DNA of 64,000 nucleotides, from assembly GCA_035221665.1 (NCBI GenBank), contig CM069142.1, forward strand, positions 27,404,001 through 27,468,000, read 5' to 3'. This document shows, one piece after another, positions 11,194 through 49,589 of this stretch. This DNA comes from Okamejei kenojei. Taxonomy: Eukaryota. Positions within the stretch are counted from its first letter, which is position 1, and every line of letters begins with the position of its first letter. The notes below the pieces were generated by a model. The model had not been told where the DNA came from. It did no database searches and saw only the letters and a list, made by a program, of their open reading frames with translations. The translations under genes and the position numbers were made by a program.

Positions 11194-11247
11194 TGTTATC
11201 CACATTTTCATATATCGGAGTTTTTTTGGATGCGTTTTGACCGTGCT
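11194..11247 (-). CDS. Cytoplasmic exon with tyrosine motif (EHGQNASKKTPIYENVDN)
   Basis: The acceptor is TATCTCTCAACAG| and the donor ACA|GTAAGT, giving 54 bp, phase 1-1. It encodes IYENV (YxN). Confidence 0.7.
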
Positions 11248-12341
11248 CTGTTGAGAGATAATCATAATATATAAAGAGTCTATTGGTAAAATATAGAATT
11301 AAGAAAAATAAGAAATTAAATCTCAATCCAGATGAAAGATCTTGTCCTAAAATGTCAACAGTACATTTCCCTTCACAAATGCTGCCTGAACTGCTGAGTT
11401 CCTCCAGTGGTTCATTGTTTGCTGTTGATTCCAACATCTGCAGTTTATTGTATCTTCAGACAAAAATAATAACCAACTGTTGGTGGTCTTATGAATGTAC
11501 TGCTTCAACCTAACTAATGATTCCACTTACATGGTTATGGCAGATAACATATCAACTGCTTTTAGTGTGTCTCCTCAATATTTTATCGTGCACCAGTTCA
11601 GCAACATTTCAAACTGGAATGAGGTATGGTTAAGCTTCATCAGGCCACAGCACTGACAATGACATCCCAATCATTCACAAGTGAGAAATGACCTATGCAG
11701 TTTACATGGAATTGCAATAACATGGACAAGCAAAGCCAAATAAAATGCACTCCATCCTGTTGAATGAAGCTATTAGATTAAATCCAGCTGTATCCATTGT
11801 AAATTGTGATATACGGTGCTTGGTGTGCTATCCTCAATTTCATACAGGGATATATGACTTTTGATTTATTTCTGTGGAAATAAAAGGCAAAATACTGATG
11901 GTGGCAAACTACTGATGAAAGAAGACTTCATCCACAATGTGAAAAACTGCTATATTCTCACAGGAGAAATTCCAAAACCCAATTATGGTTCCTGGGTGCT
12001 ACTCTTTAAAGAAGCCACCAACGGACATCAAAAACTAAATGTGCAGCAGCGTGTAATTCTTAGGAATTCTCATATAATTCAGAGCAGGAGTATATCTGCT
12101 GAAGTCATTTTAATGAAATCTGTCGCTTTACTTTAGACTTTTAGAATTTAGAGATGTAGCACAGAAACAAGCCCACCGAGCACATGCTGATCAGCGATCA
12201 CCCCGTACACTAACCTATACAAACACTAGGGACAATTTTACAACTTAGCGAAGTCAATTAACCTACAAACCTGTATGTCTTTGCAATGTTGGAGGAAACC
12301 AGAGCACGCAGAGAAAACCCACATGGTCACAGGGAGAACAT

Positions 12342-12517
12342 ATTAAAGAGTGAGTTGGATGTGGCCCTTGTGGCTAAGGGGATCAGAGGGTATGGAGAGA
12401 AGGCAGGTACGGGATACTGAGTTGGATGATCAGCCATGATCATATTGAATGGCGGTGCAGGCTCGAAGGGCTGAATGGCCTACTCCTGCACCTAATTTCT
12501 ATGTTTCTATGTTTCTA
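12342..12517 (+). mobile_element. CR1 3' end nested inside an HE1-type SINE
   Basis: It is near-identical to the reverse complement of 9505-9680. SINE sequence resumes on both sides (GGGAGAACA ... AAACTCCATATAGAC). Confidence 0.9.
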
Positions 12518-13433
12518 AACTCCATATAGACAGCACCCCTAGTCAGGACCGAACCCGGGTCTCTGGTACCGTAAGTTAGCAACTCTACCGCTGCGCCACT
12601 GTGGCATCCCTAAGCAGACATTAAACTGCCTATACTGTCAGTCTTGTAGAATTTATCCTATGTAGATTATTGGGGTGAATTCCAGTTATTGACAATACAT
12701 AAATAGCTGCACATGTGTAAATTTGTGCAGTCACAGTCATTCATGAATGGTAAATCATAACCTCATGGGTGGCAATAGACTTTTCTCAATTGCCAATGAA
12801 GCCTTTGCAATTAAGTATAATAAATAAGATTTGTAGGTTATTGTGTAGCATTATTCAATAAATTATGCATCCACTATGTTATCCCACTTTCACATCCACT
12901 CCTTACAAACTAGGAACAATTTACAGAGGTCCATTAACCTACAAACTTGCATGTCTTTGGGATGTGGGAGAAACCCGGAGCACCCGGAAGAAACCCAAGA
13001 CCTGGTTAATGGGAGAATGTGCAAGCCCCACAACCCAGGTCTCTGGTGATGCAAGGCAGGCGCTCTACCAGCTGATCTCTGTGCCGCCTGTAGTTGTTTT
13101 CAGAGTTATTTAAAATTGCTTGGCTCTATCTCCCTTGGATGTTGTTTATATACTTTCTACTACACAGATTGGAAGACTAGGTATAATATAATGAACTAAC
13201 TAAGAATAGGGCTAAATTCATTTTTCAATACTTTTTCCGGAAAGTTGAAAGTATACAGAGCAAATTGACTGGTAGTGTGTGAAGATTTGCTGCCTGCTCT
13301 GAGGATAGTGTCAGACCAGTTCTTCATTGCCAAGGAGATAATAATTCTGATCTTCCATGGCTCCGTAATTAACCAAACATAAAACAAACTGGGGAAATCC
13401 ATGATATTTCAATCCCAAACGATAGGCTTCAGT

Positions 13434-13915
13434 AGTTAGTTTGTTAGTTTAGTTTATTGGCACGTTTACTGAGGTACAGTGTGTTGCGTGCTATCTAGTC
13501 AGTGGGAAGACTATACATGATTACCATCGAGCTGTACACAATGTACAGATACAGGATTAAGGGAATAACATTTAGTGCAAGATAAAGTCGAGTAGAGTCC
13601 GATTAAAGATAATATGTAGACCTCCAATGATATAGATGGCTGCTCAGGACCATTCCCTAGACGTGATAGGATGGTTCAGTTGCTTGATAACAGCTACGAA
13701 GAAACTGTCCCTGAATCTGGAGGTGTGCGTTTTCACACTTCTACACCTCTTGCCTGATATGAGAGGGATGAAGAGGGAGTTACTTGGGTGCAACTGGTCC
13801 TTGATTATGTGTGCGGCCTTGCTGAGTTAGTGTGAGGTGTAGATGGAGTCAATGGAAGTGAGGTTGCTTTGTGTGATGTTCTGGACTGTGTCCACAATTC
13901 TCTGTAATTTCATGA
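13434..13915 (-). mobile_element. Rex/Babar-type LINE 3' fragment (related pieces at 3755-4062 +, 60525-60765 -)
   Basis: It shows similarity to the 30980-31300 C-terminus (CTGAATCTGGAGGTGTGCGTTTTCACACTTCTACACCTCTTGCCTGAT) and has a (CTAAA)n-type tail. Confidence 0.7.
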
Positions 13916-14528
13916 CGTCTCTTGAAGGTTCTCACTAGAAATCCCTTTAAAATAAATATTTATCTCAGAGACACAAGGACCTGCAAATGCTGGAATCTTG
14001 AGTACAAACAAAGTGTTGGAGAAACTCAGAGGGACAGATACTCTATTAACCTGTGACCCGTTGAGTTACTCTGATATTAATCCCAATTTGACATCACAAT
14101 GAGATTGCAGCTTCTGAATGTATGAAATATATTCCCATATATGTATTGTAAATTCTCCTACTATCTATCACACAAGGAACAAACAAGAAAATCCAATAAT
14201 TCCAGGCATGTCTGCCCTTCTTCAGCATCTGCTTTGAAGAACTGATCTTTATTTCATCTTTAGTTCTGTCCTTAAAACTCTCCTTTTAACAAGAGCAGCC
14301 AAGTAATTTTCCAATTTTCAATGCACATTGGGGTGAATTAGATATAAGGAGAAACAAATCGGTTTTGATCAGTTGACTGCCTGCTCTTTTGTTTTCAAAC
14401 TACAAAGTAATTTTGACAGTGGGAATCTTTATTGACAGACAGTGCAAAGCCAAGTGTGAAAATCCAAACACACTTTCTGCAAAATGAAAGAGGCAGCAAT
14501 CAAGGCATCAGCAGGTTTCACGCATTAC

Positions 14529-14552
14529 CATGTCTCACAGAGCCCGACCCAT
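14529..14552 (-). CDS. Candidate 24-bp cytoplasmic micro-exon (DGSGSVRH)
   Basis: The acceptor is TCTTTTGTCTTTTTTTAAAAACCAG| and the donor ATG|GTAATG. It is phase 1-1, in frame, and lies in non-repetitive sequence. Confidence 0.5.
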
Positions 14553-17009
14553 CTGGTTTTTAAAAAAAGACAAAAGATAGCTCTTTGCATTTCATTGTAA
14601 ACGAGGCAGTGTTACCAGGCTGTTTATATTCAGCAGAACAAACTACTTTTATTTTCTATAGACAATAGCGGCAACTGGTGCTCCGACATCTCCTTTAATC
14701 TGGGCAAAATTACGAGAGCACACTTGAAATCCTCCCCTCCCCCCCGGAAACCCCTCCGAAAATGTAGTGCCTTGGCCGGGTAAGGCGGCCGATATCGACC
14801 TCATCGGGACTTCTGTGACCGATTGGTGGGTTGAATGTGCCCCTACGGCCGAGGTTCTGAAGATCCTGGCTCGGCCGGAGCCAGCAGATCCGTTCCCTTA
14901 GCCAACCTCTGAGGCTGACTTTGTAGGCCGGTATTTTGGCTCCCTGGCACCATAGGTGGACAGTCCCGGCACCATTTCATTCCTCTGTTTGGTCCGGCTA
15001 ATCCAGAAAGACTCTGGAACCAATAGTGCCGGACCTATAGTTCAAGGAAGACGTTGAAGAAGGAGAGGTGTTGTTTTCCGCACTTCCTAAATGTTGTTAT
15101 ACCCATTGTGAGGACACAAGGAAATGCAGATGCCCGAAATCTTGAGCAAACCACTGTTCTTAATGTTTATAATTTACTTATTTAGTTAGAACGATGTAAA
15201 GGTAATTTTTGGAAGCACATTAATGCCAAACTGATTTTTCTTCAAATGCGGCATCTTGAAGTTTCTTCCTAGCTGTTATAAGGCAACTGAACCATCCCAA
15301 CAACTGAGATATTGTTTTGGGTTGCTGCCTGACAGCCTTACAGCGCCAGGGACCCGGGTTCGATCTTGACTAGGGATACTGTCATTATAGAGTTTGTACG
15401 TTCTGCCCATGACCTGCGTGGGTTTTCTCCATGTGCTCTAGCTTCCTCCCACACTCCAAAGACGTAGAGGTTTGTAGGCGAATTGGCTTGGTAAAATTGC
15501 AAATTGTCCCTAATGTGTGTAGGATACTGTTAGTGCGCAGGGATCATAGGTCAGCGTGGACATAGTGGGCCGAAGAGCCTGTTTCTGTACTGCATCGCTA
15601 AACTAAACTAAACTACACTGAACCATCCTATCAACAACTAGAAAGTGTTCCTGAGATGCTATCTACATTATTTGAAACCCTCGGACTATCTTTAATCGGA
15701 ATTTACTGGACTTTCTCTTGCACTTCATGAGTAAGAAGGAACTGCAGATGCTGGTTTACATCGCAGATAGACACAAATTGCTGGAGTAAATCAACAGAAC
15801 AGACAGCATCTCTGGAGAGAAGGAATGGGTGATGTTTCTACATGTTTCGAGATCCTTCTTCAAACATCAGACTTCTTCCCTTTATCATGTACCTGTATAC
15901 TGTGGATGGCTCAATTGTAATAATGTCTAGTCTTTCTGCAGATGGTTAGCATGCAACAAAAGCTTTTTACTGTACCATGGTACACGTGACGATAAACTAA
16001 ACTAACAAACTAACTAAATTGAATTACCAGGAGGATTGCTGAGGAAAAAGCAGTAGACATTGTCTATGTGGATTTTAGCAGAGCCTACCAGAGATTTTAG
16101 CTGACCAATGATCAACCATACACGAGTTCTATCCTACACCATAGGGACAATGTACAGAAGCCAATTAACCTAACCTGTATGTCTGTGGGATGTGGGAGGA
16201 AACCAGAACGCCCATAGAAAACCCAAGTGGTCCCAGGAAGTACGTACAAATTCCGTACAGACAGCAACCGTGTCAGGATCGAACCCAGGTCTCTGGCGCT
16301 GTAAGGCTGCTACTCTACTGCTGCACTACTGTGCCACCCTTGTGCCACTGTGCCACCCTTTGGTTGGGTATTTTTTCCCTTGGAACATAGAAGGCTGAGG
16401 GGTGATCTTACAGAGGTTTTCAAAATCATGAGGGGCATTGATAAGGTCATTGTCTTTTACCCAGAGTAGAGGAATCAAAAACTAGATGAGAAAGGAAAGA
16501 TTTAAGGGGACCTGGGGGGGCGGGGGGGGGGGGGGGTGCAACTGTTTCACACAAAGGGCGATGGGTATTTGGTACAAGCTGCTGGAGGAAGTGGTAACGG
16601 TGGGAACAATTACCTCATTTAAAAGACAGTTGGACATGTATACAGATAGAATGGTTTTGGAGGGATACTGGACAAACGCAGACAGATGCGACAAACTCTG
16701 GTGCACGGTTTAGTTGGCATTGACCACGTTGGGCCAATGAGCTTGTTTCCATGCTGTTTAACTGACCATACAATGCTCTACATTTACCAAACATCTGAAT
16801 TTATATTTGTATTAATGAAGCATGATATGCATTGATTCAAGGTTTATCATCTGAAATGTAACTGGGATTAAAATATTAGTCAATAAGGAATAGTGGGGGC
16901 TTGCAAATGCAATTCACAGCAAACTAGCACTAGAGGCCTTGACACAGCTGGAAGCACACAGCCAAATGTTATATTGTACCACAAAGAGATGAGATTCACT
17001 TTGAAGAGT

Positions 17010-17970
17010 GCAGCACAGGGACAGGTTATTTGGCTCACGATACCTGTGCTGAACATTACGCCAAATTAAACTAATCCCTTCTGCCTGCACATGATCCATA
17101 TCCCTCCTCCCCTTCATATTCATGTGCCTACCTAAAAATGTCTTAAATGCCTATTATTCTGCTTCCACCACCAATTTTGGCAACACATTCCCGGCATTAC
17201 CACTTGCTGTGGGCCGCACTGCAATCTTGGCTCTATTAATTTAATCTGCCATTTCTCCACCCATGTCTGCAACTGATCTAGATTCAGTTGTATCCTTTGA
17301 CAGCCTTCTTCACTGTCTATTTTTGAATCACCTGCAGATTTGCTAAACAGCCCATCTACATTTTTGTCCAAGTCTCACACACACACACACAAGCATACAC
17401 TTAGACAGATAGACAGACAGACAGATAGCACAAACAACAGAGGTCCCAAAGTCCCAGCACTGATCCCTGCAGAACACATAGGTCACACAGTCAGAATAAT
17501 ACTCTTCCAATTCTAATCTCTGTCATTTATGAGTAAGCCAGTTCTGAAAACAAACTACCAAGTCATTGTGCACCATGCATCTTAATCGTCAAGATCAACC
17601 TTCCAAGAGGGACCTTGTCAAATGGAGATAACATGCACAGCCCTACCCTCAACAATCACCTACTTCAACCCTACAAAAAACTCAATCAAACATGCAAGAC
17701 ATGTCCTGTCTTACACACAGGCATGCTGCATGTCCCTAATTTGCCCATTCTCTTCTAAATGCATGTTAATCCTATCCCTAAGAATCTTCTCCAATAACTT
17801 CCCTTCCATTGTTGTGAGACTCTCCTATAATTTTCTGCATTATCTCAATTTCCCTCTCAAACAAAATGACACTTTGTTTTTTTTCTCCAGCCCTCCATAA
17901 CCTTGCTTGGCTAGAGAAGATACAAAGACCTTCACCAAGGCCCTAACAATCTACACTCTTGCCATCTTGC
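17010..17970 (-). mobile_element. Old, degraded CR1 fragments
   Basis: There are RT-like remnants (QRIQLNLDQLQTWVEKWQ) and a CR1-like 3' UTR. A CA/GACA microsatellite lies at 17375-17428. Confidence 0.7.
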
Positions 17971-17974
17971 CAAA

Positions 17975-18375
17975 AGACAATAGACAATAGGTGCAGGAGT
18001 AGGCCATTCGGCCCTTCATGGCTGATCATCCATAATCAGTATCCCGTTCCTGCCTTCTCCCCATATCCCCTGACTCCGCTATCTTCAAGAGCCCTATCTA
18101 GCTCTCTCTTGAAAGCATCCAGAGAACCTGCCTCCACCGCCCTCTGAGGCAGAGAATTCCACAGACTCACAACTCACTGTGTGAAAAAGTGTTTCCTCAT
18201 CTTCGTTCAAAATGCCTCACCCCTTATTCTTAAACTGTGGCCCCTAGTTCTGGACTCCCCCAACATCAGGAACATGTTTCCTGCCTCTAGCGTGTCCAAA
18301 CCATTAATAATCTTATGTGTTTCAATAAGATCCCCTCTCATCCTAAATTCCAGAGGATACAAGCCCAGCTGCTGC
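17975..18375 (-). mobile_element. CR1 3' fragment
   Basis: It starts AGACAATAGACAATAGGTGCAGGAGTAGGCC and contains a GDLIETHKI...RTRGHSLRI remnant. Confidence 0.9.
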
Positions 18376-18840
18376 CTTGGGGATTTATCCATCTTTTTGC
18401 ATTTTAAGAGACCTAACACCATCTACAACTTGATCTTCAAATTCCCTAACATATTGGTATATCCCACACTGATCTCAGTATCCTCCATGTCCTTTTCCTT
18501 GAGGAAATGTAATTTTCCAATTTAAGGGGTAGATAAAAGCTATGCATAATGCCATATGGCAATTTCCCTACTTTTTAGACCAGTCTGAAGAAGGGTCTCG
18601 ACCCGAAACGTCGCCTATCTCCTTCGCTCCTTAGATGCTGCTGCACCCGCTGAGTTTCTCCAGCATTTTGTGTAACCCTCGATTCTCCAGCATCTGCAGT
18701 TTCTTCGTTAACAAGCAAGTCTCCTTGTTTGTTACATGTTATTGGAGTTGTTTGCATTGTGAAATAATAATGTCCGTTCGGAAATTAAATTTAGAGGAAG
18801 TTAAGCAGAAAGGAAATGTTTGCAGTCACGTAGGACTCAC

Positions 18841-18909
18841 CTGAAGACTTTCTCTTCAACTTCCATATAATCAACACAGCAACAATAATTGCTATGGCAC
18901 CAATTGAAA
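18841..18909 (-). CDS. Transmembrane exon of the IgV receptor (VSIGAIAIIVAVLIIWKLKRKSS)
   Basis: The acceptor is CTTCTTATTATTTCAACAG| and the donor CAG|GTGAGT, giving 69 bp, phase 1-1. Joined to the previous exon it gives a 22-aa hydrophobic helix, ILMYLAVSIGAIAIIVAVLIIW, followed by the basic stop-transfer sequence KLKRK. Confidence 0.85.
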
Positions 18910-19467
18910 CTGTTGAAATAATAAGAAGCACCAATTGCTGTAAAATTATGCTGCAGTTCCCTATTTACACAGCCCTTGTGTGCTTTCATTTGCACTGTTG
19001 CAATGTGATACATTTTGTTATTGACAATCCTACCGCGAGTCCAATTGCTGTTGAGCTTCCAGTTTTATATCAACATTAAGAGCATTAAAGGCACCGCAAA
19101 TTAGCTGCTCAAATTATTTGGGTTAAAAGCCACAGCCGCCCAAAAGTAGTTGATAATGCATTCATGATATTTCAAGTGAAATCAAATTGATTGTACAGAA
19201 GTCATTGAAGCATAAAAGCTTAAAGGGCAAGATAAATTAATAGTGTATAACCATTAGGACAACATAATAGAAATAAATAACATAAGTTTAGTATAACTGG
19301 ATTTGAAAAGCTATGTAGTAACTTGTTTTTGCATAACTAGCATAACCTGTACAAGTTTTACAGATTCTTTGTAATATTCTACCAACATTAAATTAATAGT
19401 AATTCAAGATTATAAATTAATACTGAAATTGTGAGGATAGTGGACAGAGTTTTGTTTTCATTCTCAC

Positions 19468-19524
19468 CTGCAAGGTACATTAAGATATTTCTCTTAAGAC
19501 GGTGCTTTGTAGTAATGTCATAGC
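19468..19524 (-). CDS. Stalk exon of the IgV receptor (GYDITTKHRLKRNILMYLA)
   Basis: The acceptor is TTTTTTGTTATTAACAG| and the donor CAG|GTGAGA. The exon is 57 bp, phase 1-1, open, and supplies the start of the TM helix. Confidence 0.8.
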
Positions 19525-20375
19525 CTGTTAATAACAAAAAAGGTTTACAAATGCATGTTCAAATTATTCACTGAATTATATTATTATTGATCAACTTCTA
19601 ATATCTGATCCAATGAATTAATCACCTCAAAAACATGTTGTGGAACAAGAAATGGAATGGACCTTGGGGCTGCTGAGGCCTATTCTTTCACCCATCAAGG
19701 TCATGGCTGAAGATAGACACAAAATGCTGGTGTATTTCAGCAGGTGAGGCAGCTTTTGTGGAGTAAGAAACAATTAACATTTCATCAGTTTTACCTAAGG
19801 GCCATCAACATGAAACATTAAGTCAGAAAGTTTTTCAGTCTGAAACATTAATATTGTTCCTCCATCCACAGATGCTGCTTAACTTGTTGAGAATTTCAAG
19901 CACTTTTTGTTTATATTTCAGATTTCCAGCCATACCAACGTGCTCCACCTACACTAGTCCCACCTGCCTGCAATGTGCATTTGGCCCACATCCTTCAAAA
20001 CCTCTCCTATCTATGTACCTGTCCGAATGTGTTTTACATGTTGTGATAGTACACAACAACCTCCTCAACTGTCTACTCTGGCAGCTAGTTCCATATAACT
20101 TCCAACTTTTGTATAAAAAAGGTATGGAACTTTTATAAACACTCTTAACGTGATCCATATTAATTGGCAGATGAGAGTATTTAAGAAAAATCTTTCAGCA
20201 AATTGGGATTTCTAATCATTATAAAAATGTATCAATTTGAGATTTATCTGAGCTTTCTGGAATAGCCCTTCATAAATGTATCCATTCACCATTTTGAAAA
20301 CCTCCATTTAAATATTGCTTAATTTTACATCATTCAAAGCAGTTTATAAATTTGGCATATTTTGTAAAACATTAC

Positions 20376-20705
20376 CATTTACATCCAAGTGTACTTTGCC
20401 CTCTATTTTGCCGTCTGGAAAGGTATGAAATATGCAGGTGTACTCGCCGCTGTCTGCTGGCTGAACTCCTGTGATTGTGATCATGGATCGATGTCCATTA
20501 ACTTCCAGTTTTATTCGTTCATTGTGGAGAGTTGTTGCGTTTGTGGCCACGTGGAACACTACGAGTCTTGTTCTGTTTTCAGTCTTCTCCCATTCAACTA
20601 ATACCAGTTTGAGATCTTTGTTTGAAGAGGCACAATGTAATGCTGCTGAACTGCCTTTCACAGCAGTTACAGACTCACTACTTTCAAGCTCTTTTGTTTG
20701 AATAC
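20376..20705 (-). CDS. IgV-domain exon of a TIGIT/CD226/nectin(PVR)-family receptor
   Basis: The acceptor is TTTCTTTACTCCCCCAG| and the donor AATG|GTAAT, giving a 330-bp phase 1-1 exon. It translates to (G)IQTKELESSESVTAVKGSSAALHCASSNKDLKLVLVEWEK...GVQPADSGEYTCIFHTFPDGKIEGKVHLDVN. B-strand Cys, C-strand Trp, the DxGxYxC motif and the T(F/Y)PxG motif are present. Confidence 0.93.
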
Positions 20706-21497
20706 CTGGGGGAGTAAAGAAAAATGTGTCATTAAACTTTTTAGTTTTGTTTCATTCTGAGATACAGCGTGGAAACAGTATTTTCAGCTCACCGAGTCCA
20801 CGCCAACCATGATCACCTGTTAGTTCTATCCTATGCACTAGGGATAATTAACCAAAGCCAATTAACCTACAAACCTGTACGCCTTTGGAATGTGGGAGGA
20901 AACCGGAACACCCGGAGAGTCACAGGGAGAATGTACAAACTCTGTATAGATAGCACCCATAATCAGGATTGAACCAGGTTCACTGGCATTGTAAGGCAGC
21001 AACTCTACTGCTGCACCACTATGCAATCCCTTATTCTGTGGATAACAGTCGGGTCCGGTTGAAAATCTACTTAACTAGGAACCCAGCAATATTGGACTCA
21101 TTTCAGAGCCAAGTACCGGTGAAGGAATTAAACTTTTTGTCGTTTTGGTATGGTTTTCAATTGGCCCAATCATTTTTTTAAATGGTATAACACTCCCCAA
21201 GATACCATCAACTGGTGCAATGCCTGCAATCCTCTGCATGTTGTTTTCAGCCTCACTAGCCTGAAAGATAATAGTAAGATTAAACGAGAACTTACCAGTT
21301 CGAAGTTTGATCGTTATTTTATGAGGAGTAACAATGAGGGATTACGTGAAGAAGCCCCGCCTGGCACTAGAACGGCATACTTCAAAGCAGCGGCATGAAA
21401 AACACAGAACACAATAGCCGGAGTAAGATAGTAAGGCTCATCATAGATTTAGAACTACAAGATGATCATTTATTTTATGAGGGTGGGGAGTGGAGGG

Positions 21498-21610
21498 CAC
21501 GTAATCCCTCATCGTTACTCCTCATAAAATAACAATCAAATTTCGAACTGGTAAGTTCTCGTTTAATCTTACTATTTTACTTCGGAGTCACGTGAGTGAC
21601 TACGTGAAGA
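21498..21610. repeat. DIRS internal complementary region (ICR)
   Basis: 21498-21576 is the reverse complement of terminus 21270-21348, and 21571-21610 is the reverse complement of terminus 26180-26219. The two halves overlap at ACTATT. Confidence 0.95.
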
Positions 21611-21855
21611 TTTTGAAGCTTCTGTGTTTTTCATGTCGTAGAGTCATTCCATACGACAGTCCGGCTAGGTCAACACATACATGAGTAAATAAACTTTTAC
21701 CAGATCAGTTTTAGTTCTTTTCATAAATCTTTTAATGATAAAAGAACATATAATAACCCCCTTTTTTACATTTTGGGAAACCATTACAAAGTGATAAAAG
21801 ATATGAGTGATAACATAATCGATAATATCAATCAATAGTGAAACAAAGCAGGTGA

Positions 21856-22827
21856 TTATAGTGAACCCAACACCGCGTGTCCAAAGCCTGTCATTGTGTG
21901 AACAGGTTTATTGTAGAACTTTGAAAAAGTTTCTTCTTTACACCACCCTGCGGTTTCTAAAATGTGTTCGAGTGGTACGTCCTGTAACTTCGCCGCGGGC
22001 GTAGCTGCTGCCCTGGTGGAGTGAGATTTGAACACATCAGTGTCTACTCCTGCTAAAAGTAACACCTGTTTTAACCACCTTGAAATTGTTTGTACCGAAG
22101 CTTTTGTGTGTGGTTTCTTATGCGTAATCATTAATGCTTTTTCATCACCACAAAGAGTTTTGGTAACTTTTATATATTGATTCAAATGTATAACTACACA
22201 CAACGTTGGATCAATAGGGTAAGCTTGAAACATTACCTTTGCTCCAGTTCTCCCTGGTCTGCTTTGTTTGATCAGATTGTAAACATAAAACACAATGTTA
22301 TCTACAGCCACATGCATACAGTCTAAACGTAGCATTTGTAATGTTTGCACCCTTTGTGCTGAAACCAATGCCATTAACATTACTAATTTAAATGTTAACT
22401 TTTCCAATGATAAAACTTCGATTGGAGTCCATTGCCTAAGTAAAGTAAGTACAATGCTGACATCCCAAATTTCTGTATATCTTGGTTTGGGTGGATTTTT
22501 GTTAAAGATTCCTTTCATAAATTTGGATATTAATGGATGTGATCCAATTGATTTTTGGTCAGAAATTTGTCCTAAATAGGATGATAAAGCACTAAGTGCA
22601 CTATTAATGGCACTATAATTTAAGTGCTGTTCAAAATGTAACTCGGCAAGGAACTCCAATATGTTTGAAATGTTCACAGTATGATAATATATATATGATT
22701 GTCTACAAAAAATTTCCCATTTCTTTATATGTGTCATATATTGTCTCTGAGTGCTATCTCGCCATGATGCGACTATAACATCCATAGTTCTATCCGACAA
22801 TCCAAGCTCTTGTAGTGGTCTGGTCAA
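21856..22827 (-). CDS. DIRS tyrosine recombinase (uninterrupted, 323 aa)
   Basis: The N-terminal binding region is followed by catalytic motifs AQRVQTL (R), KQSRPG (K), KSHSTR (HxxR), AGW and FSKFY (Y). Confidence 0.93.
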   Translation of the reverse strand: MTRPLQELGLSDRTMDVIVASWRDSTQRQYMTHIKKWEIFCRQSYIYYHTVNISNILEFLAELHFEQHLNYSAINSALSALSSYLGQISDQKSIGSHPLISKFMKGIFNKNPPKPRYTEIWDVSIVLTLLRQWTPIEVLSLEKLTFKLVMLMALVSAQRVQTLQMLRLDCMHVAVDNIVFYVYNLIKQSRPGRTGAKVMFQAYPIDPTLCVVIHLNQYIKVTKTLCGDEKALMITHKKPHTKASVQTISRWLKQVLLLAGVDTDVFKSHSTRAAATPAAKLQDVPLEHILETAGWCKEETFSKFYNKPVHTMTGFGHAVLGSL

Positions 22828-23609
22828 AACCTGCAGATTAACAAATTCATATAAGCATGTAACGGATAAATTTCTTTGGTTACCGGTTTTATTAACAAAT
22901 CTCTGCTGCTAGGAATTGACATATATGGCTCTTTAATCATGTTTAACATCAATGGGAACCATGATTGTGTCGGCCAATTTGGAATCACCAATAATCCTGT
23001 GGCAGAATCTTGTTCTATTTTCTTCAGACATTGCTGAACCAGAGCAAATGGCGGGAAAGCATAAAATAACATATTCCCCCAATGTAGTGAAAAAGCATCT
23101 ACTGCTACTGCATCTGGATCTGGTTCCCAAGACACATACTTAGGCAATTGATGATTTAATCTTGATGCAAACAGATCAATGTCTGGTAACCCATATTGAA
23201 TCACAATTTTACTGAAAATTACTGGGTTCAACATCCATTCTGTGTTGTCTTTAAACACCCTTGATCTATTGTCTGCCACCACATTGTCTTTACCTGGGAT
23301 ATAATTTGCCGAAATCCAAATTTGGTGCTTAATACACCACTGCCATATCTGATTGACCAGACAATCACATGATACCGATCTGACTCCACCCATGTGATTA
23401 ATATATGCAACAGCTGTTTTATTGTCTAATTGTATCAGTACATGCAGATTCTTTTTTGTAGAACAATAGGCTTTTAATCCATAAAACACCCCCAATGACT
23501 CTAAATAGTTAATACCATATGTTTGGAGAAACATTTCTTCTTGGACAGTCCATCTGCCCCCACAACTGGTAAATGTATCTGTCGCCCCCCCATCCGAGAG
23601 CACTAGCAT
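22824..23609 (-). pseudogene. DIRS pol C-terminal part: RNase H plus N6-adenine methyltransferase-like domain
   Basis: RNase H motifs are INYLE, DNKTAVAYINHMGG and IPGKDNVVADNRSR. MT-like motifs are DIDLFAS, YAFPPF and IPNWPTQSWF. This part is frameshifted from RT at the C7 run 23585-23591. Confidence 0.9.
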
Positions 23610-24760
23610 CTGTTTGTAAAAATACTTCAGGCTGTTGTATTAAAATGTTTTTAGCAGCTTGTGGGACATTTTCAATCCACCATTGCAATTCCAATAAAGC
23701 TTCTTTTGTTAATTGCATAGGCCTATCAAAATGGCCTGCTCGCTTTTTTAGAGCTCTTATTTTGTCCCTTTGAAGGTTTTGGTAATGTAATGGACCAAAT
23801 TCTACTGCAGGAAATGCTGCTACTAGTTTACCAATAACCTTTGCTACTTCCCGGATGGAGGGATAAAGTTTGTGAATGAGACCCCTACAGACCATTAAAA
23901 TATCATCAATCTTATCTGTTGGCAAAGTTACTAACATAGTAACTGAGTTAATCACAAACCCCAAATAGTTAATTGACTGTGCTGGCTGCAGCTGGGACTT
24001 AATTGGATGAATCAAGAAACCTAACTTCTCAAATAAAGTCTTAGTTGCTGAAACTGATTTTCCAGCTGATTCCTGATTACTACTGATAATTAAAATGTCA
24101 TCCAGATAAGCCATAATGATGTGCTTTTGTGCTCTTAATTGTGCTTAAGCTGGTTTCAACAGCTTTGTGAAGAGCCTGGGAGCTGAACTTAACCCATTTG
24201 GTAAAGCTTTAAATTGCCACAGCTGTCCCAGCCAATTAAATTTTAAATACCTTAGAAAAAAATGATGTATTGGTACTGAATAGTACACATCTTTTAAATC
24301 AATTGTAGCCATATAACAACCTGCTAATATCAAATGTCTTGTAGTGTTGAACGTTTCCATCTTAAAATGTTTATACTCGACAAATGTATTAAAGATTGTA
24401 AGGTCCAGAATAATTCTGCAACCACCATCTTTTTTACTTCTTGGAAAGATATTTGACACAAATTGATGTTTATGTTCAATAGTTTTTTCAATAACACCTT
24501 TTTTAAACAATTTGTCAATTTCCACATTAATTTCTGCTTCTACAATAGCAGAAAACATGAAACCATAAGCAGGTTTATTTTGTACCGGAGAATTAACACC
24601 TTCTTTAAATGTTATAGTAGCTCCTGAAACTGTTTGTAAAATAAACCGATCAGATGTGATGGCAAGCCATTCATCATAAAACATTTGTAATCTCCCTCCA
24701 ACTGGAGATTTGTCCACAGTTTCTTTAAGAATAGAATATTTTTTTTGTACCTCTCCATAT
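23509..24760 (-). pseudogene. DIRS reverse transcriptase with one in-frame stop
   Basis: Motifs are PVGGRL, KKDGGCRIILDL, IDLKDVYYSVP, ALPNGLSSAPRLFTK, YLDD and YLGF. A TAA at 24145-24147 interrupts an otherwise continuous frame. Confidence 0.92.
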
Positions 24761-25951
24761 GAACGTGGTGATCTCCTTCTCCCCGTATACGGGTGAACAT
24801 TAGGCTGTGTCGGATGGTAATATTTTCTTATTATATTCATGCCTCTGTTTCCAAAATCAAATCCCCTCCTTGACGAAAAATACCTTTTTTGTCCAAAAAC
24901 GAAAGGTCTCATGTGGCTAATAGATTTAGCCTCTTCATCCATTTCTCTTATTTGTTTAGGCAGGTTCTCTCCAAATAGATAACCAGGAGCTTGAACACCA
25001 CTTGATCGACACAGACCTGCAAACCTTGGATGCAATATGGGCCGAATCGCAATTTTCCTCATACAATTAATTTCATAAAAGGAATTGCACAATAAGCCCA
25101 AAGTATCTTTTTGGATTTTAACCATTTCCAACCCTTCCATTTGCCTTCCAAAAGCAGTAATGGCAGCTAAAATCAGTTTGAGGATTCTTTGAAATCTTAT
25201 TTCTTGCCCTCTCATGCCTGGAGTCATAGGTGTCCATATAGACGGATTAACCGTAGGTACCTTCAATGAGGTGCAATTTTCCGGTGTTTTATATAATTCT
25301 GCTGTTTCAACCATCACAGATTCTTGAAGTTGGTGAGATACCATATAATTAATACTGGCAGCTAGGTTTTCTTCCATAGCCTCACCACTTCCTTCAGGTA
25401 TAGCAAAATCTTTTGCCATATCAGGCACATATGGCCTCTTCTTTTTTATTTGTGGTGTGCACTCATAATCCACATCACCACTTGCAGGGTCTGACTTTTG
25501 CAGCCCTGATACACCTGGAATTATATCCAATGAGACTTCCTCCACCCTTGTTCCTGGGTCTGGAGTTTCAAATTCCCAATTTGGCACATAGCCATATTCT
25601 GGATATTCAAACCCCTCAGGGTCATTTTGGGTACTTTGACCCTTGTCTCATAATATTTTGGAGCACTTTCTCCATATGTTCCATTTTAAGCCATATAGCT
25701 TTATTATCCGGAGGACTTTCATTATCAGAGTCATCATCAGAAACCACGGGCCTCACGGATTTCTTTTTACTTTTTCTAGGAACATTTTCCTCCGTGGTTT
25801 GTATTTCTGGAGAAATTATAGTCTCAATAACGGGTGAATCAGCGGCCACCGGTATCGGAACCGGATCCGCACTAATCTCTTGTCCCGACTCTTTAGCTTC
25901 TCCCCGGGACGATCTTTTTACCCGCGAAATTTTCCTTTGAGACTTCTCCAT
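24760..25951 (-). CDS. DIRS gag-like region (two frames: 25622-25951 and the 5' part of the 24145-25587 ORF)
   Basis: It lies upstream of RT inside the element. It carries DIRS gag-like segments PENCTSLKVPTVNPSIW and YLFGENL. Confidence 0.7.
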
Positions 25952-26548
25952 TTTTCATTTTTATTATCTGGCTAAATCAGCACGCCAGCGTGACTCTGAT
26001 TTTGAATTTTTACTTTCACTTTTGCTGGTTCTACCAGCATAACGTCTTTTTAAGAACGTCCCCTATTTTCCTTGCACTTAACTGCGGGTCCGTTCCGGCC
26101 GCTGCGAGGAGCTACACTCTGCAGCTCTTGCTTCTGCCGTCAGCATCGACGTAATGCCGTTCTAGCGCCAGGCGGGGCTTCTTCACGTAGTCACTCACGT
26201 GACTCCGAAGTAAAATAGTTCCTATCTGCTCAATGAACAATTAGCGTTATTAATGCTAAAATGTGCTATTTGAGGGACCAACTCAAAGTGCATGGTTTTC
26301 TGAAGGAGACCCTTCTGACATGCAGGTTTGTAGGTTTATTGTCTTTGGTAAAAATTTTGTAAATTGCCTGTAGTGTGTAGGATAGTGCTACTGTACAGGG
26401 TGATCACTGGTCGTCATGGACTCGGTAGGTCAAAGACCCTACTTCCGCACTGTATTTCTAAAGTCTAAAGTCTAAATCATGCAATGGAACTTTTGAGTTT
26501 TTCTTTTTTCTTTCATTATTTAAAAGACCTCAGTCTTCCTTTTCCTAA

Positions 26549-27335
26549 TGGGCCTGTCCCACTTAGGCAATTTATTAGGTGACTGCAGGAGACTATGCAG
26601 TCGCCACATGGTCGCCACATGTTCGCGGGAAGTTGCCGTGGAGTCGCCTTCACGGTCGTGAGGAGTTCCCGCATTCTGGGAACTAGTCGTGGCCTGATTA
26701 TGGTTGCCACGAGTTTTTCAACATGTTGAAATATTAGCGGCGACTAGAATGAAGGCGCCATGGAGAGTAGTGAGAATTCTCGAGCCGTAGGTGGGTCGCC
26801 AGGAGGTCCTAGTGGGTGGCTAGGAGATCGAATGTTCTCGGAGGTTCTCACAGGTTGTAGCTGGTGCTGACCGGTGAATTTCATTGGCTCATCGGGAAAA
26901 AAAAGGTGAGCAGTAGTTTTCAGAACCAAGGATAACCGACCGGTAATGTTAAATGTCCGCCGAGCTTCACAGCCGTGTATCTCTGGCTCATTAAAAGTTA
27001 TCTCCACTCCTTTTCCCCCCTTCTCACCCACTTCTCTCCCCCATCTTTTAAAGGACTTACCGTACACTGTGCTAGCCATCTTAACTACAGCGCCAACCTT
27101 CCTATTCATCGCGGTGTGTGCCTGCATCACCTTGTGAATTCTTTCGACACCGCTCCCCCCGCTTGCCCTGTCCCCCGCCTGCATAACGGGCTGGTGAAGA
27201 AAGTGATATGTGTGTGTGTATGTGTGTGTTCCATTCTGACAGTCGCCATTCCAGTTGCCAGTTTTTCAGGCGACTGCCGGCAACTTGACAGTCGCCAGCA
27301 GTCCGCTGAAAAATCGCATAAGTGGGACAGGCCCA
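26549..27335. mobile_element. Non-autonomous PIF/Harbinger-type element, 787 bp
   Basis: The TIR is TGGGCCTGTCCCACTTA, with a TAA duplication and repeated GTCGCC subterminal motifs. Confidence 0.85.
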
Positions 27336-28100
27336 TAAAGCTAGATTCCTGGCTGTTCCATCTGTCTTGGTGGCTGTGCTTTCTAGTTCTGGTATATGCC
27401 CTGTAAATATTTCTGGCACATTCTTCAGTGACTCTTTGCCCTTTATATAATATAATGAGCCAGACAGTGAATTGCATTCGGTGTGTGGCCTAATCACACA
27501 TCCACATAATTATAACGTCTTCACTTCTTATGTCTGTCGCTGTAGAAATGATCTCCCCTGCTCTGTTCACAGGCTTATTGGCATGTTAAGCTGCATTGCT
27601 AATTTTATTCATTTCTCAATCTGTAATTCTAGATCTGTTTTTTTTTAATTAAAAAGTCAAGATTCAAGATTGTTTTATTGCCATATGTTTTGAAACAGAA
27701 CAATGAAATTCTTACTGGATAGATACAAAATGCTGGTGTAACGCTGCTGATCAGGCAGCATCTCTGGAGAAAAGGAATAGGTGATATTTTCAGTCGGAAG
27801 CCTTTAAACTGAAAGATGGAGGTGGGGGCAGGGGGAACTTGTGGCGAGAAAAGGCTGGAACAAATGAGGGCCTTTTCTCGTTCTCGTTGAGAGAGAGAAA
27901 GAGGTTGTAATAGATTTGAATAGACTTTAATTCCAGGACTCACTTGCTTTACTCAATCCATTATCCATGCTGTAATTAGCTGATGGTGGCAGTGGAATGT
28001 TGTGTGGTTTCCGAACTCTGTCAATCATAAACGATCAACCTCCTTCTCTGATGCTTTAAATGTGTTGAAGGGACCCCCCTCCACGATACGTGAAATCAAA

Positions 28101-28912
28101 AAGTTCAAGTTCAAGTTCACATTTATTGTCACATACACCAATTAAGGTACAGTGATATTTGAGTTACCATACAGCCATACAAATAAAAATAACACAATAC
28201 ACGATAGAGATTAACGTAAACATCCATCACAGTGGAATCAACATTCCTCACTGTGATGGAAGGCGATAAAGTTCAGTCAATCTTCCTTCTTTCATCACCC
28301 GTGGTCGGGGCCTTGAACCCTCCGCAGTCGCTGCTATGGACAGCCTGATGTACAAGCCCTCTCGTTGGGATGATCGAAACTATGACGTTGAGACGGAAAT
28401 GAACACACTCCGCGGTTTGGAGTTTCCGAATCGGACGCTTCTTACCGGAGACCGCGGCTTCACGATGTTAAAGACCATGGGCCAGCATTCGGAGTACTTC
28501 TCCTGGCAAGGGATCCGAGGCTCCGCGATGGTAAGTCCGCCCTGCGCCCGCGGCTAGAAGCTCCGAAGAACTCTGCAGTCAGCAGGCGCCCGCGGTCGGA
28601 TCTCCAACACTGGCGACCCTCGGCAAAGGTTCCCAGGCTCCTCGATGGTATGTCCGCACCACGCCGGCCGCTGAAGCTCTGGGCTGGTCTCCGGTCTGAT
28701 AAGGCCACACCAAGCCAGTTGTTAGGCCGGGAGGGGGGCATGGAGAGAAGTCACATCTCTGTCAATGTAAGTGACTGTGAACGCTTTCCCCCTATTCCCC
28801 CCCACCACCCCCCACATAAGAAATACAGAAAAACATTAAATCATACATTTAGATGCACTAAAAATACCAAAAAAAGTTGAAAGCACAGACGGGCTGCTGG
28901 CGAGGCGGTGAC
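28101..28912 (-). mobile_element. Probable GC-rich LINE 3' UTR fragment
   Basis: It starts with an (AAGTTC)n tail followed by TTTATTGTCACA, as in other LINE ends here. The body is CpG-rich with no credible ORF. Confidence 0.5.
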
Positions 28913-31425: not shown

Positions 31426-32045
31426 AATCCGAGAAAGATATGAGGCCAAACTTGGTGGATAAGATAGGCATAGACACATTACTGAATGGCAGAAAAAGCT
31501 TGAGATGCTGGTCTTAATCCTCTTCTTCTTCAAGTATTTATTTCTTCTGAGTTTATCATAAAAGGATCACTATTAAATCATCAATTCTGGTGGTGTTCTT
31601 TTGTAAAACAGCTCGATAAAAAGAGAAATGAAATAAAAGGGTGGTAAAGAGATCCTAGCTATGGGTGCTGTCTGCACAGAGTTTATATGTTCTCCCCGTG
31701 ACCTACGTGTTTTATCTCCAGGTGCTCCGTTTTTTCCTCCAACACTTCAAAGACGCACAGGTTTGTGGACTAATTGGGTTTGTTAAATTGTCCCCAGTGT
31801 GTGTAGAATAGTGTTAGTATGCAGGGATCATAGGTCAGCGTGGACTCAGCGGGCCTGAGTCCTGTTTCCACTCGTATCTCTAAACTAAACTAAACTAATA
31901 TAAAATATAATAATGGGGTTATTACTACAGATGATGAACTAAAGGGAATGAAAGATATAAAAATCACCGATGAAAAGCATAATTGAATTTAATGCTGTTT
32001 GCCACATTGCCAAAGAAATGACCGGATATAAGTGTTTATTGTTTA

Positions 32046-49522: not shown

Positions 49523-49589
49523 GCCCCTCTTTGTTCTTGGTGGCGTGGCATAACCCACTTTCCACAGCCCTTCCTCGGCCTGACCTCCT

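What the first reader, a model, noticed from the sequence alone, without database searches (positions are those of the whole stretch)
11194..20705. TIGIT-like single-IgV immune receptor in an apparent cartilaginous fish
Five minus-strand exons with canonical splice sites, all phase 1-1, join into IgV, stalk, TM and a Tyr-containing tail (seen in sequence). The F-G strands DSGEYTCIFHTFPDGKIEGKVHLDV closely parallel my recollection of human TIGIT (DTGEYFCIYHTYPDGTYTGRIFLEV), and VTAVKGSSAALHC parallels ISAEKGGSIILQC. If it is an orthologue, a TIGIT/CD226-type checkpoint receptor dates to the base of jawed vertebrates (inference). The ORF track shows only the IgV piece.
Basis: partly seen in the sequence, partly recalled or inferred. 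Interest (0 to 1): 0.8.

Follow-up and report, generated by a model that had tools for sequence, protein, structure and literature searches.

The report
Skate TIGIT-family receptor, paralogue B
This is a real, intact gene in a skate for a single-domain immune receptor of the TIGIT/nectin-binding family, but it is the sister copy ("B") of the true TIGIT-like gene. It shares that gene's ligand-binding domain and carries a different signalling tail, and relatives in sharks are already auto-annotated as "TIGIT-like".

Summary
**Observation.** The exons are real. The IgV (20705-20376), stalk (19524-19468), membrane (18909-18841) and tyrosine (11247-11194) exons all lie on the minus strand. All are phase 1-1 with AG/GT sites. 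I found a leader exon at 33405-33342.

**Family.** The IgV matches human TIGIT best in the PDB (E 4e-10; profile E 1e-14), ahead of CD226 and nectin-1. In a tree it falls on the TIGIT side, not the CD200/nectin/CD96-like side (97/94).

**Two genes.** Sharks have two genes per species:
- A has a TIGIT-type tail (…DYFNV).
- B has a different leader, stalk, membrane span and a YENV tail.

Their IgV domains are 95-97% identical within a species, which indicates concerted evolution. The window is B: every non-IgV exon matches shark B proteins, while its IgV is 88% identical to the little skate's A protein.

**Novelty.** NCBI already names these genes "TIGIT-like" in about 12 cartilaginous fishes and "TIGIT" in bowfin, gar and frogs. 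A 2026 paper still dates TIGIT to amniotes. No B protein of a skate or ray was in the databases.

**Limits.** Expression was not shown and synteny was not testable. Function (nectin-type ligand, Grb2 docking at YENV) is inferred.

The parts
33342..33405 (-). Exon 1 (coding part): ATG at 33405-33403, 21 codons (MFWLTLMKIMKASAIYIIYVP) plus one base (T). A GTAAGT donor follows at 33341-33336, phase 1. The start of the 5' UTR is unknown.
   Evidence: - An HMM of shark and chimaera type-B leaders gives this as the best hit in all six frames of the window (score 10.4, E 0.095).
- The sequence was read.
- Three of 30 shuffled windows reach that score.
- The hit also starts at an ATG, lies on the gene's strand upstream of the IgV exon, and ends at a consensus phase-1 donor where the homologues' leader ends.
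- It was not found by my ab initio scans, which required G|GT. The split codon here is T|GT (Cys), not G|GT (Gly).
20376..20705 (-). Exon 2: IgV domain, 330 nt, phase 1-1. It has two N-glycosylation sequons (NRT, NAT), the Cys pair, and the F-G loop HTFPDG.
   Evidence: sequence; V-set, E 4.8e-13; TIGIT is the best PDB match; 88% identical to Leucoraja XP_055500539; model pLDDT 88.9; TIGIT and nectin D1 at TM 0.80-0.88.
19468..19524 (-). Exon 3: stalk, 57 nt, phase 1-1. It encodes (G)YDITTKHRLKRNILMYLA(V). Acceptor ttattaacAG, donor GTGAGA.
   Evidence: It is the only strong phase 1-1 candidate between the IgV and membrane exons (sequence). It aligns with the type-B stalks of Carcharodon (MKHRLRNLSTYIS) and Heterodontus.
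18841..18909 (-). Exon 4: membrane span plus basic stop-transfer, 69 nt, phase 1-1. It encodes SIGAIAIIVAVLIIWKLKRKSS. There is no charged residue in the span. Donor GTGAGT.
   Evidence: sequence; tblastn with P0008 and P0015; type-B tail HMM, E 7.9e-05; alignment. The exon edge agrees with Carcharodon isoform X3, which skips exactly this exon.
11194..11247 (-). Exon 5: cytoplasmic tyrosine exon, 54 nt, phase 1-1. It encodes (E)HGQNASKKTPIYENVDN. A GTAAGT donor lies at 11193-11188. If that donor is not used, the frame runs on through SKFNKYQ to a stop at 11173-11171.
   Evidence: sequence; tblastn; HMM, E 0.08; aligns with the first YENV exon of shark type-B proteins. It holds the only Y-x-N-(V/I/L/M/C) site on this strand between 6000 and 20376.
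20706..33341 (-). Intron 1 (12.6 kb). The element is not part of the receptor.
   Evidence: The intron follows from exons 1 and 2. Element ORFs: reverse transcriptase (E 3.1e-07) and a tyrosine recombinase of the phage-integrase family (E 1.7e-05, just under Pfam's cut-off).

Best explanation
**What it is.** The window holds the 'type B' member of a pair of TIGIT-family genes found in cartilaginous fishes. It encodes a type I membrane protein of about 195-200 residues made of:
- a signal peptide
- one IgV domain of the nectin/PVR-binding kind, closest to TIGIT
- a short stalk
- an uncharged membrane span
- a short basic tail with one tyrosine in the sequence IYENVDN

**Shown here.**
- The exon structure.
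- Exon-by-exon homology to shark type-B proteins.
- Placement of the IgV in the TIGIT family.
- A separate type-A gene in sharks and rays with a TIGIT-type tail.
- IgV domains of A and B that stay nearly identical within a species while every other exon differs (concerted evolution, most likely gene conversion confined to the IgV exon).

**Inferred.**
- The IgV binds a nectin/PVR-like ligand, and the same ligand as type A.
- After phosphorylation the Y-E-N-V site docks Grb2-type SH2 adaptors, as the Y-x-N 'ITT-like' sites of TIGIT and CD226 do.
- B and A therefore compete for one ligand and feed it into different signalling. This is the logic of mammalian TIGIT versus CD226, built here as a paired receptor.
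For: **Family.**
- TIGIT is first in the PDB with the single exon (E 4e-10, against nectin-1 at 6e-07 and CD226 at 1e-05).
- TIGIT is also first with a profile built only from cartilaginous-fish sequences (TIGIT 1e-14, CD226 2.6e-12, nectin-1 1.6e-11, CD96 4e-08, PVR 1.6e-06).
- The fold model matches TIGIT, nectin and CD96 D1.
- In the tree, the cartilaginous-fish sequences and the bony-vertebrate TIGITs fall on one side of a 97/94 split, and CD200-, nectin- and CD96-like domains on the other.

**Type B identity.**
- Leader, stalk, membrane and YENV exons align with Heterodontus XP_067895990, Carcharodon, Chiloscyllium and Callorhinchus proteins.
- The three split junction codons give G, V and E, the same residues as in Heterodontus.
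- No type-A membrane or tail exon was found anywhere in the window.

**Two genes with a homogenised IgV.**
- The IgV exon regions of Heterodontus A and B differ at only a few residues (about 95% identical by my count). Those of Carcharodon A and B differ at three (about 97%).
- Leaders, membrane spans and tails differ completely.
- Both genes of a species lie on the same chromosome-size contig.
- In the IgV tree, A and B pair by species.
- Holding all B IgVs together as one clade is rejected (AU p 2e-47).

**Type A is the TIGIT-tail form.** The alignment with bowfin, gar and frog TIGIT has an invariant tail tyrosine in (D/E/N)Y(F/M/L)(N/S/T)(V/I).

**A second IgV copy in the same organism.**
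- Contigs in three runs are about 97% identical across the exon.
- They become unlike within 1-5 bases of both exon edges.
- Two of their five amino-acid changes (S61, T74) are the residues of skate type A.

**Motif role.** The roles of the ITT-like motif and Grb2 are taken from PMC8981293.
Against: - No RNA evidence. No listed run is on record as RNA, and no contig was laid on the stalk or on the upstream 40 bases of the membrane exon. The tool warns that such holes prove nothing.
- No type-B protein of any skate or ray appeared in the protein searches. Only type A was found in Leucoraja, Rhinoraja, Pristis, Mobula and Hemitrygon. B may be weakly expressed, or decaying, in batoids.
- Two of the three PVR-family submotifs are not kept: (V/I)(S/T)Q reads LVL, and AX6G is absent. 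Ligand binding is therefore less certain than the overall similarity suggests.
- The window has one YENV exon where sharks have two.
- The 3' end is open.
- The leader's statistical support from sequence alone is modest (E 0.095).
Confidence: 0.7

Rival explanations
1. The window gene is the one and only TIGIT orthologue of this skate. On this view the YENV tail is simply what the TIGIT tail looks like in cartilaginous fishes.
For: The IgV is 88% identical to a Leucoraja protein named TIGIT-like. TIGIT is the best PDB match. Y-x-N is also the core of TIGIT's ITT-like motif.
Against: - That Leucoraja protein, and those of four other batoids, have a different leader, membrane span and tail, and these align with bony-vertebrate TIGIT.
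- The window's non-IgV exons instead match the second gene type of sharks.
- Two shark species have both genes.
Confidence: 0.07
2. There is one gene with one IgV exon and two alternative 3' exon sets. The B set lies proximally in the window, and the A set lies beyond the window's edge.
For: - The IgV is closest to type-A proteins of other skates.
- Only 20 kb downstream of the IgV exon is visible.
- Contigs carrying a near-identical IgV continue into sequence that is not the window's stalk or membrane exon.
Against: - In Heterodontus and Carcharodon, A and B proteins differ in the leader and at several IgV residues, so they come from separate IgV exons and promoters.
- The window has a type-B leader.
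- The contigs with other flanks also differ at 9 of 335 bases inside the exon.
Confidence: 0.06
3. The gene is type B by descent but is silent or decaying in skates. It would be a relic whose IgV exon is kept looking intact only by gene conversion from the working type-A gene.
For: - No batoid type-B protein is in the databases.
- Only one YENV exon is present, against two in sharks.
- The last leader codon gives Cys where all homologues have Gly.
- A 5-kb retrotransposon sits in intron 1.
- There is no RNA evidence.
- Five of the six listed differences from the second copy change an amino acid.
Against: - All five exons are open.
- All eight splice sites that were checked are canonical, three of them consensus GT(A/G)AGT.
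- The junction codons are conserved.
- The membrane span, basic anchor and tyrosine site are intact, and none of these could be maintained by conversion from A.
Confidence: 0.15
4. Type B is the cartilaginous-fish counterpart, or even the orthologue, of CD226, the activating partner of TIGIT.
For: - NCBI names some of these shark models 'CD226 antigen-like'.
- CD226 D1 is the second-best family in the profile search.
- From my own knowledge, not tested here: CD226 signals through a tail tyrosine followed two residues later by Asn.
Against: - B has one Ig domain, while solved CD226 ectodomains have two (entries 6isa and 6o3o).
- The same NCBI name is also given to a type-A model, so the name is not diagnostic.
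- The B IgV groups with the A IgV of the same species, not apart from it.
Confidence: 0.05

Closest known systems
Shark and chimaera type-B gene models: Heterodontus francisci XP_067895990.1 ('TIGIT-like isoform X1'), Carcharodon carcharias TIGIT-like X1 / 'CD226 antigen-like X3', Chiloscyllium plagiosum XP_043557455.1, Callorhinchus milii LOC103184848
   Same: - The exon plan is the same: leader, IgV, stalk, membrane, YENV.
- The leader starts MFWL…MK.M…AIY.
- The stalk has KHRL.RN.
- The anchor is IWK.KRK.
- The tail has P(I/L/F)YENV(D/H)N.
- The split-codon residues are G, V and E.
   Different: - The IgV is only 35-50% identical to them.
- Sharks have two YENV exons and the window has one.
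- The last leader codon gives Cys, not Gly.
- No such model exists for any skate or ray in the databases searched.
Batoid type-A gene models: Leucoraja erinacea XP_055500539.1 / XP_055500538.1 ('TIGIT-like'), Rhinoraja longicauda ('nectin-1-like'), Pristis, Mobula, Hemitrygon
   Same: The IgV is 88%, 83% and 63-67% identical, the nearest sequences known.
   Different: Leader (MIRAAFVCLLIVSG), membrane span, juxtamembrane R(K/R)RIHxPNQINV and the C-terminal DYF(S/N/T)V tail are unrelated to the window's exons and are absent from the window.
TIGIT of bony vertebrates (human PDB 3UDW, 3Q0H, 5V52; RefSeq models of bat, frogs, bowfin, gar)
   Same: - A single IgV.
- The best sequence match.
- The F-G loop HT(F/Y)PDG.
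- Type I topology.
- A tail tyrosine followed by Asn at +2.
- The structure model superposes at about 1.8-2.2 Å.
   Different: - About 26-33% identity.
- (V/I)(S/T)Q is LVL, and there is no AX6G.
- There is no ITIM.
- The tail is not alignable with TIGIT's; it is the paralogue A that aligns.
Paired immune receptors with homogenised ectodomains (for example SIRP alpha/beta, KIR, PILR, CD200R and its activating relatives; general knowledge)
   Same: Two linked genes have near-identical ligand-binding domains within a species and divergent membrane and tail parts.
   Different: B has no charged membrane residue for a DAP12- or FcR-gamma-type adaptor, and neither member has a canonical ITIM. Both carry Y-x-N-type tyrosines, so which member activates and which inhibits is unknown.

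Membership tests
TIGIT (orthologue in the strict sense) | A single extracellular IgV domain on a type I membrane protein | tested here: met
   There is one V-set exon and no other Ig exon in 64 kb. Leader, stalk and membrane exons are present.
TIGIT (orthologue in the strict sense) | The IgV is closest to TIGIT among related families | tested here: met
   TIGIT is first in the PDB with the exon alone and with a profile. The exon falls on the TIGIT side of a 97/94 split against CD200-, nectin- and CD96-like domains. Real CD226 D1, PVRIG and CRTAM were compared only through the PDB ranking, not in the tree.
TIGIT (orthologue in the strict sense) | A cytoplasmic tail homologous to TIGIT's: the juxtamembrane R-R-I-x-x-P-x-x-(I/V) stretch and the C-terminal acidic run followed by (D/E)YFN(V/I) | tested here: not met
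   These features are in type-A proteins and absent from the window. The window's tail is KLKRKSS-E-HGQNASKKTPIYENVDN.
TIGIT (orthologue in the strict sense) | An ITIM, (I/V/L/S)xYxx(L/V/I) | tested here: not met
   The only tyrosine has Pro at -2 (TPIYENV). The ITIM tyrosine is also missing in type A and in the bowfin, gar and frog TIGIT aligned here, so it may be a later addition.
TIGIT (orthologue in the strict sense) | Conserved synteny with the TIGIT neighbourhood | not testable with these tools
PVR/nectin-family IgV (TIGIT, CD226, CD96, PVRIG, PVR, nectins) | The submotif T(F/Y)P in the F-G loop | tested here: met
   HTFPDG aligns with HTYPDG of human TIGIT. The motif definition is from PMC8981293.
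PVR/nectin-family IgV (TIGIT, CD226, CD96, PVRIG, PVR, nectins) | The submotifs (V/I)(S/T)Q and AX6G | tested here: not met
   The window reads KLVLVEW where TIGITs read K(I/V)TQ(V/F)(N/E)W. It reads RLVVFHVAT where human TIGIT reads LAICNADLG. The other cartilaginous-fish sequences (chimaera aside) read (L/M/I)V(L/M)(V/I)(E/Q)W here.
PVR/nectin-family IgV (TIGIT, CD226, CD96, PVRIG, PVR, nectins) | The fold of the family's membrane-distal V domain | tested here: met
   AlphaFold model pLDDT 88.9. The top Foldseek matches are nectin-1 D1, TIGIT, CD96, nectin-3/-4, PVRIG and CD226 complexes, at TM 0.70-0.88. The fold does not separate the family's members.
PVR/nectin-family IgV (TIGIT, CD226, CD96, PVRIG, PVR, nectins) | Binds a nectin or PVR-like ligand | not testable with these tools
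   This needs a binding assay.
Cartilaginous-fish TIGIT-like type B (defined here) | A type-B leader, a KHRL-type stalk, an IWKxKRK anchor, E at the membrane|tail junction, and P-x-YENV-x-N | tested here: met
Cartilaginous-fish TIGIT-like type B (defined here) | Transcribed and spliced as modelled | tested here: inconclusive
   No run on record as RNA holds the exon, and the runs that were laid are contigs and probably DNA.

The most novel reading that the evidence does not exclude
Cartilaginous fishes run the TIGIT axis as a true paired-receptor system.

- It has two linked genes. One has the ancestral TIGIT tail, and one has a Grb2-type YENV tail.
- Gene conversion has kept their ligand-binding IgV exons nearly identical within each lineage since before sharks and rays split.
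- Both therefore always see the same nectin-like ligand while signalling differently.

This would be an early, differently built version of the TIGIT-versus-CD226 competition. It would put that checkpoint logic at the base of jawed vertebrates.
Probability: 0.3. Interest if true: 0.7.

Novelty: new member of a known kind. Interest (0 to 1): 0.5.

Why it matters
**Age of the family.** TIGIT is a major checkpoint target, and its age is unsettled in print. A 2026 survey of human IgSF families places CD96, CD226 and TIGIT at the amniote level (PMC13262535). The sequences gathered here show a TIGIT-type IgV and tail in sharks, rays, bowfin, gar and frogs. The family therefore goes back to the common ancestor of jawed vertebrates. 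This parallels the recent database-based redating of PD-1 to sharks (PMC12151841).

**The A/B pair.** The less expected result is that cartilaginous fishes have two genes with a shared, homogenised IgV and unrelated tails. That offers a natural experiment on how one ligand-binding domain is coupled to different signalling.

**For this genome.** The practical result is a five-exon model of an unannotated type-B gene, with a leader 12.6 kb upstream across a retrotransposon-bearing intron.

Tried and rejected
- **Word-index protein search with the IgV exon alone:** nothing. The tool only sees proteins of 60-190 residues for this query, so the blank says little.
- **The look-up of encoding contigs for the Leucoraja gene:** No homologous locus, intron structure or synteny could be read.
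- **Ab initio leader search** (ATG, hydrophobic core, G|GT donor):
  - It gave only unconvincing candidates, for example 57287-57248, which lies in a LINE tail.
  - It missed the real leader because the split codon there is T|GT.
  - The homologue HMM found the real leader.
- **Search for a second YENV exon, type-A membrane and tail exons, or any further Ig exon in the window:** none.
- **RNA support:**
  - The only sequencing-run search returned no run on record as RNA.
  - The single read-laying run showed contigs that are probably DNA.
  - I first read the exon-edge truncation of those contigs as splicing.
  - I dropped that reading because the alignments run 1-5 bases into the splice sites, and a paralogue's genomic copy fits equally well.
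- **AU test holding only the four elasmobranch B IgVs together:** log-likelihood loss of 235 but p 0.168. The two numbers do not fit each other and I do not rely on this test. The test with all five B rows rejects clearly.
- **The frog protein named 'CD226 antigen-like' (P0067):** by its motifs (VSWKK, DEGCYTC) it is CD200-like, so it could not stand in for CD226 D1.
- **Joined spliced protein:** not built and not sent to any search or fold. Each exon was searched by reference on its own.

Full report
**1. What is in the sequence**

On the minus strand an open frame at 20703-20377 sits in an exon bounded by an AG acceptor and a GTAATG donor. The exon begins at 20705 and ends at 20376, with phase 1 at both ends.
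- It scores as a V-set immunoglobulin domain (Pfam E 4.8e-13).
- The printed alignment covers the whole domain, including the F-G strands.

**2. Relatives and names**

The word-index search with this 109-residue piece was blank. Its length window excludes full-length receptors, so I used the exhaustive HMMER search.
- The best hit, P0001, is 88% identical. It is Leucoraja erinacea XP_055500539.1, 'T-cell immunoreceptor with Ig and ITIM domains-like'.
- Further hits at 46-51% identity carry the same name in Heterodontus, Mustelus and Chiloscyllium.
- At 33-36% come a Callorhinchus protein and proteins named TIGIT in bowfin and gar. Frog and bat TIGITs follow.
- Two word searches with full-length hits added Carcharodon, Heptranchias, two Scyliorhinus species, Pristis, Hemitrygon, Mobula and Rhinoraja.

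Automatic annotation therefore already calls this family TIGIT-like in about a dozen cartilaginous fishes. Identity to the window falls from skates (88%, 83%) to other rays (63-67%) to sharks (at most 51%). The window therefore comes from a skate. Notes by other agents on this genome say the same.

**3. Two tail types**

Reading the proteins shows two kinds.
- **Type A** has a leader MI(R/K)T..V.LLIV(S/T)G, a long membrane span, a juxtamembrane HQRKSR(V/I)N(I/L)PNQINIILKN, and a C-terminal acidic run ending in (D/N)Y(F/M/L)(N/S/T)V. Aligned with TIGIT of bowfin, gar, a characin and three frogs, the tail tyrosine is invariant and the juxtamembrane stretch lines up.
- **Type B** has a leader MFWLLAVMKML…, a stalk with HL/RL-(H/R)MRN, an anchor IWKMKRK, and one or two copies of P(L/F/I)YENV(D/H)N.

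Heterodontus and Carcharodon each have both types, on the same chromosome-size contig. Within each species the IgV parts are almost identical. The Heterodontus IgV exon regions differ at only a few residues (about 95% identical by my count), and the Carcharodon ones differ at three. Similarity collapses at the end of the IgV exon.

**4. The window is type B**

tblastn of the homologues onto the window finds the single IgV exon, a type-B membrane exon and a type-B YENV exon. It finds nothing of type A. HMMs of the A and B tails against all six frames agree: B membrane exon E 7.9e-05, B YENV exon E 0.08, no credible A hit.

A scan for phase 1-1 exons gives one strong candidate between the IgV and membrane exons, 19524-19468. 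It encodes YDITTKHRLKRNILMYLA, which matches the Carcharodon stalk MKHRLRNLSTYIS.

The exon edges read from the sequence are:
- 20705-20376 (IgV)
- 19524-19468 (stalk)
- 18909-18841 (membrane)
- 11247-11194 (YENV)

The split codons give Gly, Val and Glu, the residues found at the same places in Heterodontus type B. Carcharodon isoform X3 skips exactly the membrane exon and joins the stalk to ELGRK…YENV. This confirms the exon limits and shows that no exon lies between the membrane and YENV exons.

Other ab initio candidates are weak and have no homologue support.

**5. Leader and 3' end**

My first scans required the Gly split codon G|GT and found nothing convincing. An HMM of type-B leaders gave one clear top hit on the right strand at 33405.

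The sequence reads acaaaATG, then 21 codons MFWLTLMKIMKASAIYIIYVP, then T|GTAAGT. The first four residues equal those of Heterodontus, and AIY matches Carcharodon.

The score alone is reached in 3 of 30 shuffled windows. Four further features are not part of that score: the ATG, the strand, the upstream position, and a consensus phase-1 donor where the homologues' leader ends. The split codon is TGT (Cys) instead of GGT (Gly). It would sit at the end of the signal peptide.

Intron 1 is then 12.6 kb. It contains a DIRS-like retrotransposon, with reverse transcriptase and tyrosine recombinase ORFs.

The 3' end is open. Exon 5 ends at a GTAAGT donor in phase 1, as the first YENV exon of sharks does, but the window has no second YENV site. 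Without splicing the frame ends seven codons later, at 11173-11171.

**6. Family placement**

A profile built only from the cartilaginous-fish sequences ranks PDB families as follows:

| Family | E-value |
|---|---|
| TIGIT | 1e-14 |
| CD226 | 2.6e-12 |
| nectin-1 | 1.6e-11 |
| CD96 | 4e-08 |
| nectin-4 | 8e-08 |
| PVR | 1.6e-06 |

CD200, PVRIG and CRTAM are not among the best 60.

An IgV tree of 54 domains from the HMMER hits gives these results:
- The cartilaginous-fish sequences form one clade (95/93).
- They fall on the same side of a 97/94 split as TIGIT of tetrapods and holosteans. CD200-like, nectin-like, CD96/nectin-3-like and butyrophilin-like domains are on the other side.
- Relations among the TIGIT-side groups are not resolved.

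An AlphaFold model (pLDDT 88.9) matches nectin-1 D1, TIGIT, CD96, nectin-3/-4, PVRIG and CD226 complexes about equally. This supports the family but not a particular member.

Of the three PVR-family submotifs named in PMC8981293, only T(F/Y)P is kept. (V/I)(S/T)Q is LVL, and AX6G is absent.

**7. Concerted evolution**

In a 22-row tree rooted on bony-vertebrate TIGIT, A and B IgVs pair by species: Heterodontus 89/81 and Carcharodon 99/97. The window's B IgV sits with skate A IgVs (92/99). Forcing all B IgVs into one clade costs 245 log-likelihood units (AU p 2e-47).

I named the groups by tail type, which is independent of the IgV columns, but I did so after seeing the first tree. A second test with only the four elasmobranch B rows gave an inconsistent p value, and I set it aside.

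The B-type leader, stalk, anchor and tail are shared by a chimaera, sharks and this skate. The A-type parts are shared by sharks and rays. Both genes are therefore old, and the IgV exon must have been repeatedly homogenised.

**8. Reads**

The run search found no holder on record as RNA. The laid runs are Logan contigs and are probably DNA.
- One run of the same coded organism carries the exon without any difference.
- Three others carry a copy with 9 differences in 335 bases. Its alignment stops 1-5 bases beyond both exon edges, and one contig runs on for 229 unlike letters.
- Five of the six listed differences change an amino acid. Two of them (N61S, M74T) give the residues of skate type A.
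- The simplest reading is the type-A paralogue of this skate. A very divergent allele is not excluded.
- No contig lay on the stalk or on the upstream 40 bases of the membrane exon, but the tool states that such holes prove nothing.

Expression and splicing of the window's gene remain untested.

**9. Mechanism**

Shown here: a signal peptide, one glycosylated IgV of the TIGIT kind, a stalk, an uncharged membrane span with a KLKRK anchor, and a short tail whose only tyrosine lies in IYENV.

Inferred:
- It binds a nectin/PVR-like ligand, shared with type A because the IgVs are kept alike.
- After phosphorylation the site docks Grb2-family SH2 domains. Y-x-N is their consensus (general knowledge), and it is the core of the ITT-like motifs of TIGIT and, as I recall, CD226.
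- There is no ITIM and no charged membrane residue. The direction of signalling cannot be read from the sequence.

**10. Novelty**

I found no paper on TIGIT in cartilaginous fishes. A 2026 survey places CD96, CD226 and TIGIT at the amniote level.

The gene family is nevertheless already in RefSeq under TIGIT-like names. This window therefore adds a new member, the first batoid type-B gene, to a known kind. The A/B pairing with a homogenised IgV is, as far as I could find, undescribed.

**11. Limits**

- True CD226 D1, PVRIG and CRTAM were compared only through the PDB ranking.
All searches used single exons by reference.

Noticed in passing
window 21856-25587 (minus strand), within about 21270-26219: A DIRS-like retrotransposon sits in the receptor's first intron, in the same orientation. 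Its long open ORFs include a reverse-transcriptase piece (Pfam RVT_1, E 3.1e-07) and a 323-residue tyrosine recombinase (Phage_integrase, E 1.7e-05, just below Pfam's cut-off).
   Followed up: partly
Proteins P0008/P0160 (Heterodontus) and P0157/P0161 (Carcharodon); not in the window: Each shark has two TIGIT-like genes on one chromosome. Their IgV domains are 95-97% identical within the species, while the leaders, membrane spans and tails are unrelated. NCBI names them inconsistently: 'TIGIT-like', 'CD226 antigen-like', 'nectin-1-like', 'uncharacterized'.
   Followed up: yes
window 20372-20710, contigs of runs X1-X3: A second copy of the IgV exon exists in the same coded organism, with 9 differences in 335 bases and unlike flanks. 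Five of the six listed differences change an amino acid (K16E, S27P, N61S, E67G, M74T).
   Followed up: partly
Alignment A2 (type A and bony-vertebrate TIGIT tails): The ITIM tyrosine of mammalian TIGIT (LSYRSL) has no counterpart in sharks, rays, bowfin, gar or the frogs aligned. Only the ITT-like tyrosine is invariant. The 'ITIM' in TIGIT's name may be a late addition.
   Followed up: partly
window 893-3292, 40684-43301, 49353-50139, 54601-54996, 57685-58886 and others: The rest of the window is largely LINE debris: reverse transcriptase (E 3.6e-23) and endonuclease (E 1.3e-09) ORFs, with many copies of the …GYGEKAGTGY ORF2 tail. No other cellular gene was found in the 64 kb. Two database models of type-B homologues, Callorhinchus LOC103184848 and Chiloscyllium XP_043557455, run into such LINE sequence at their C-termini and are probably mispredicted there.
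   Followed up: partly
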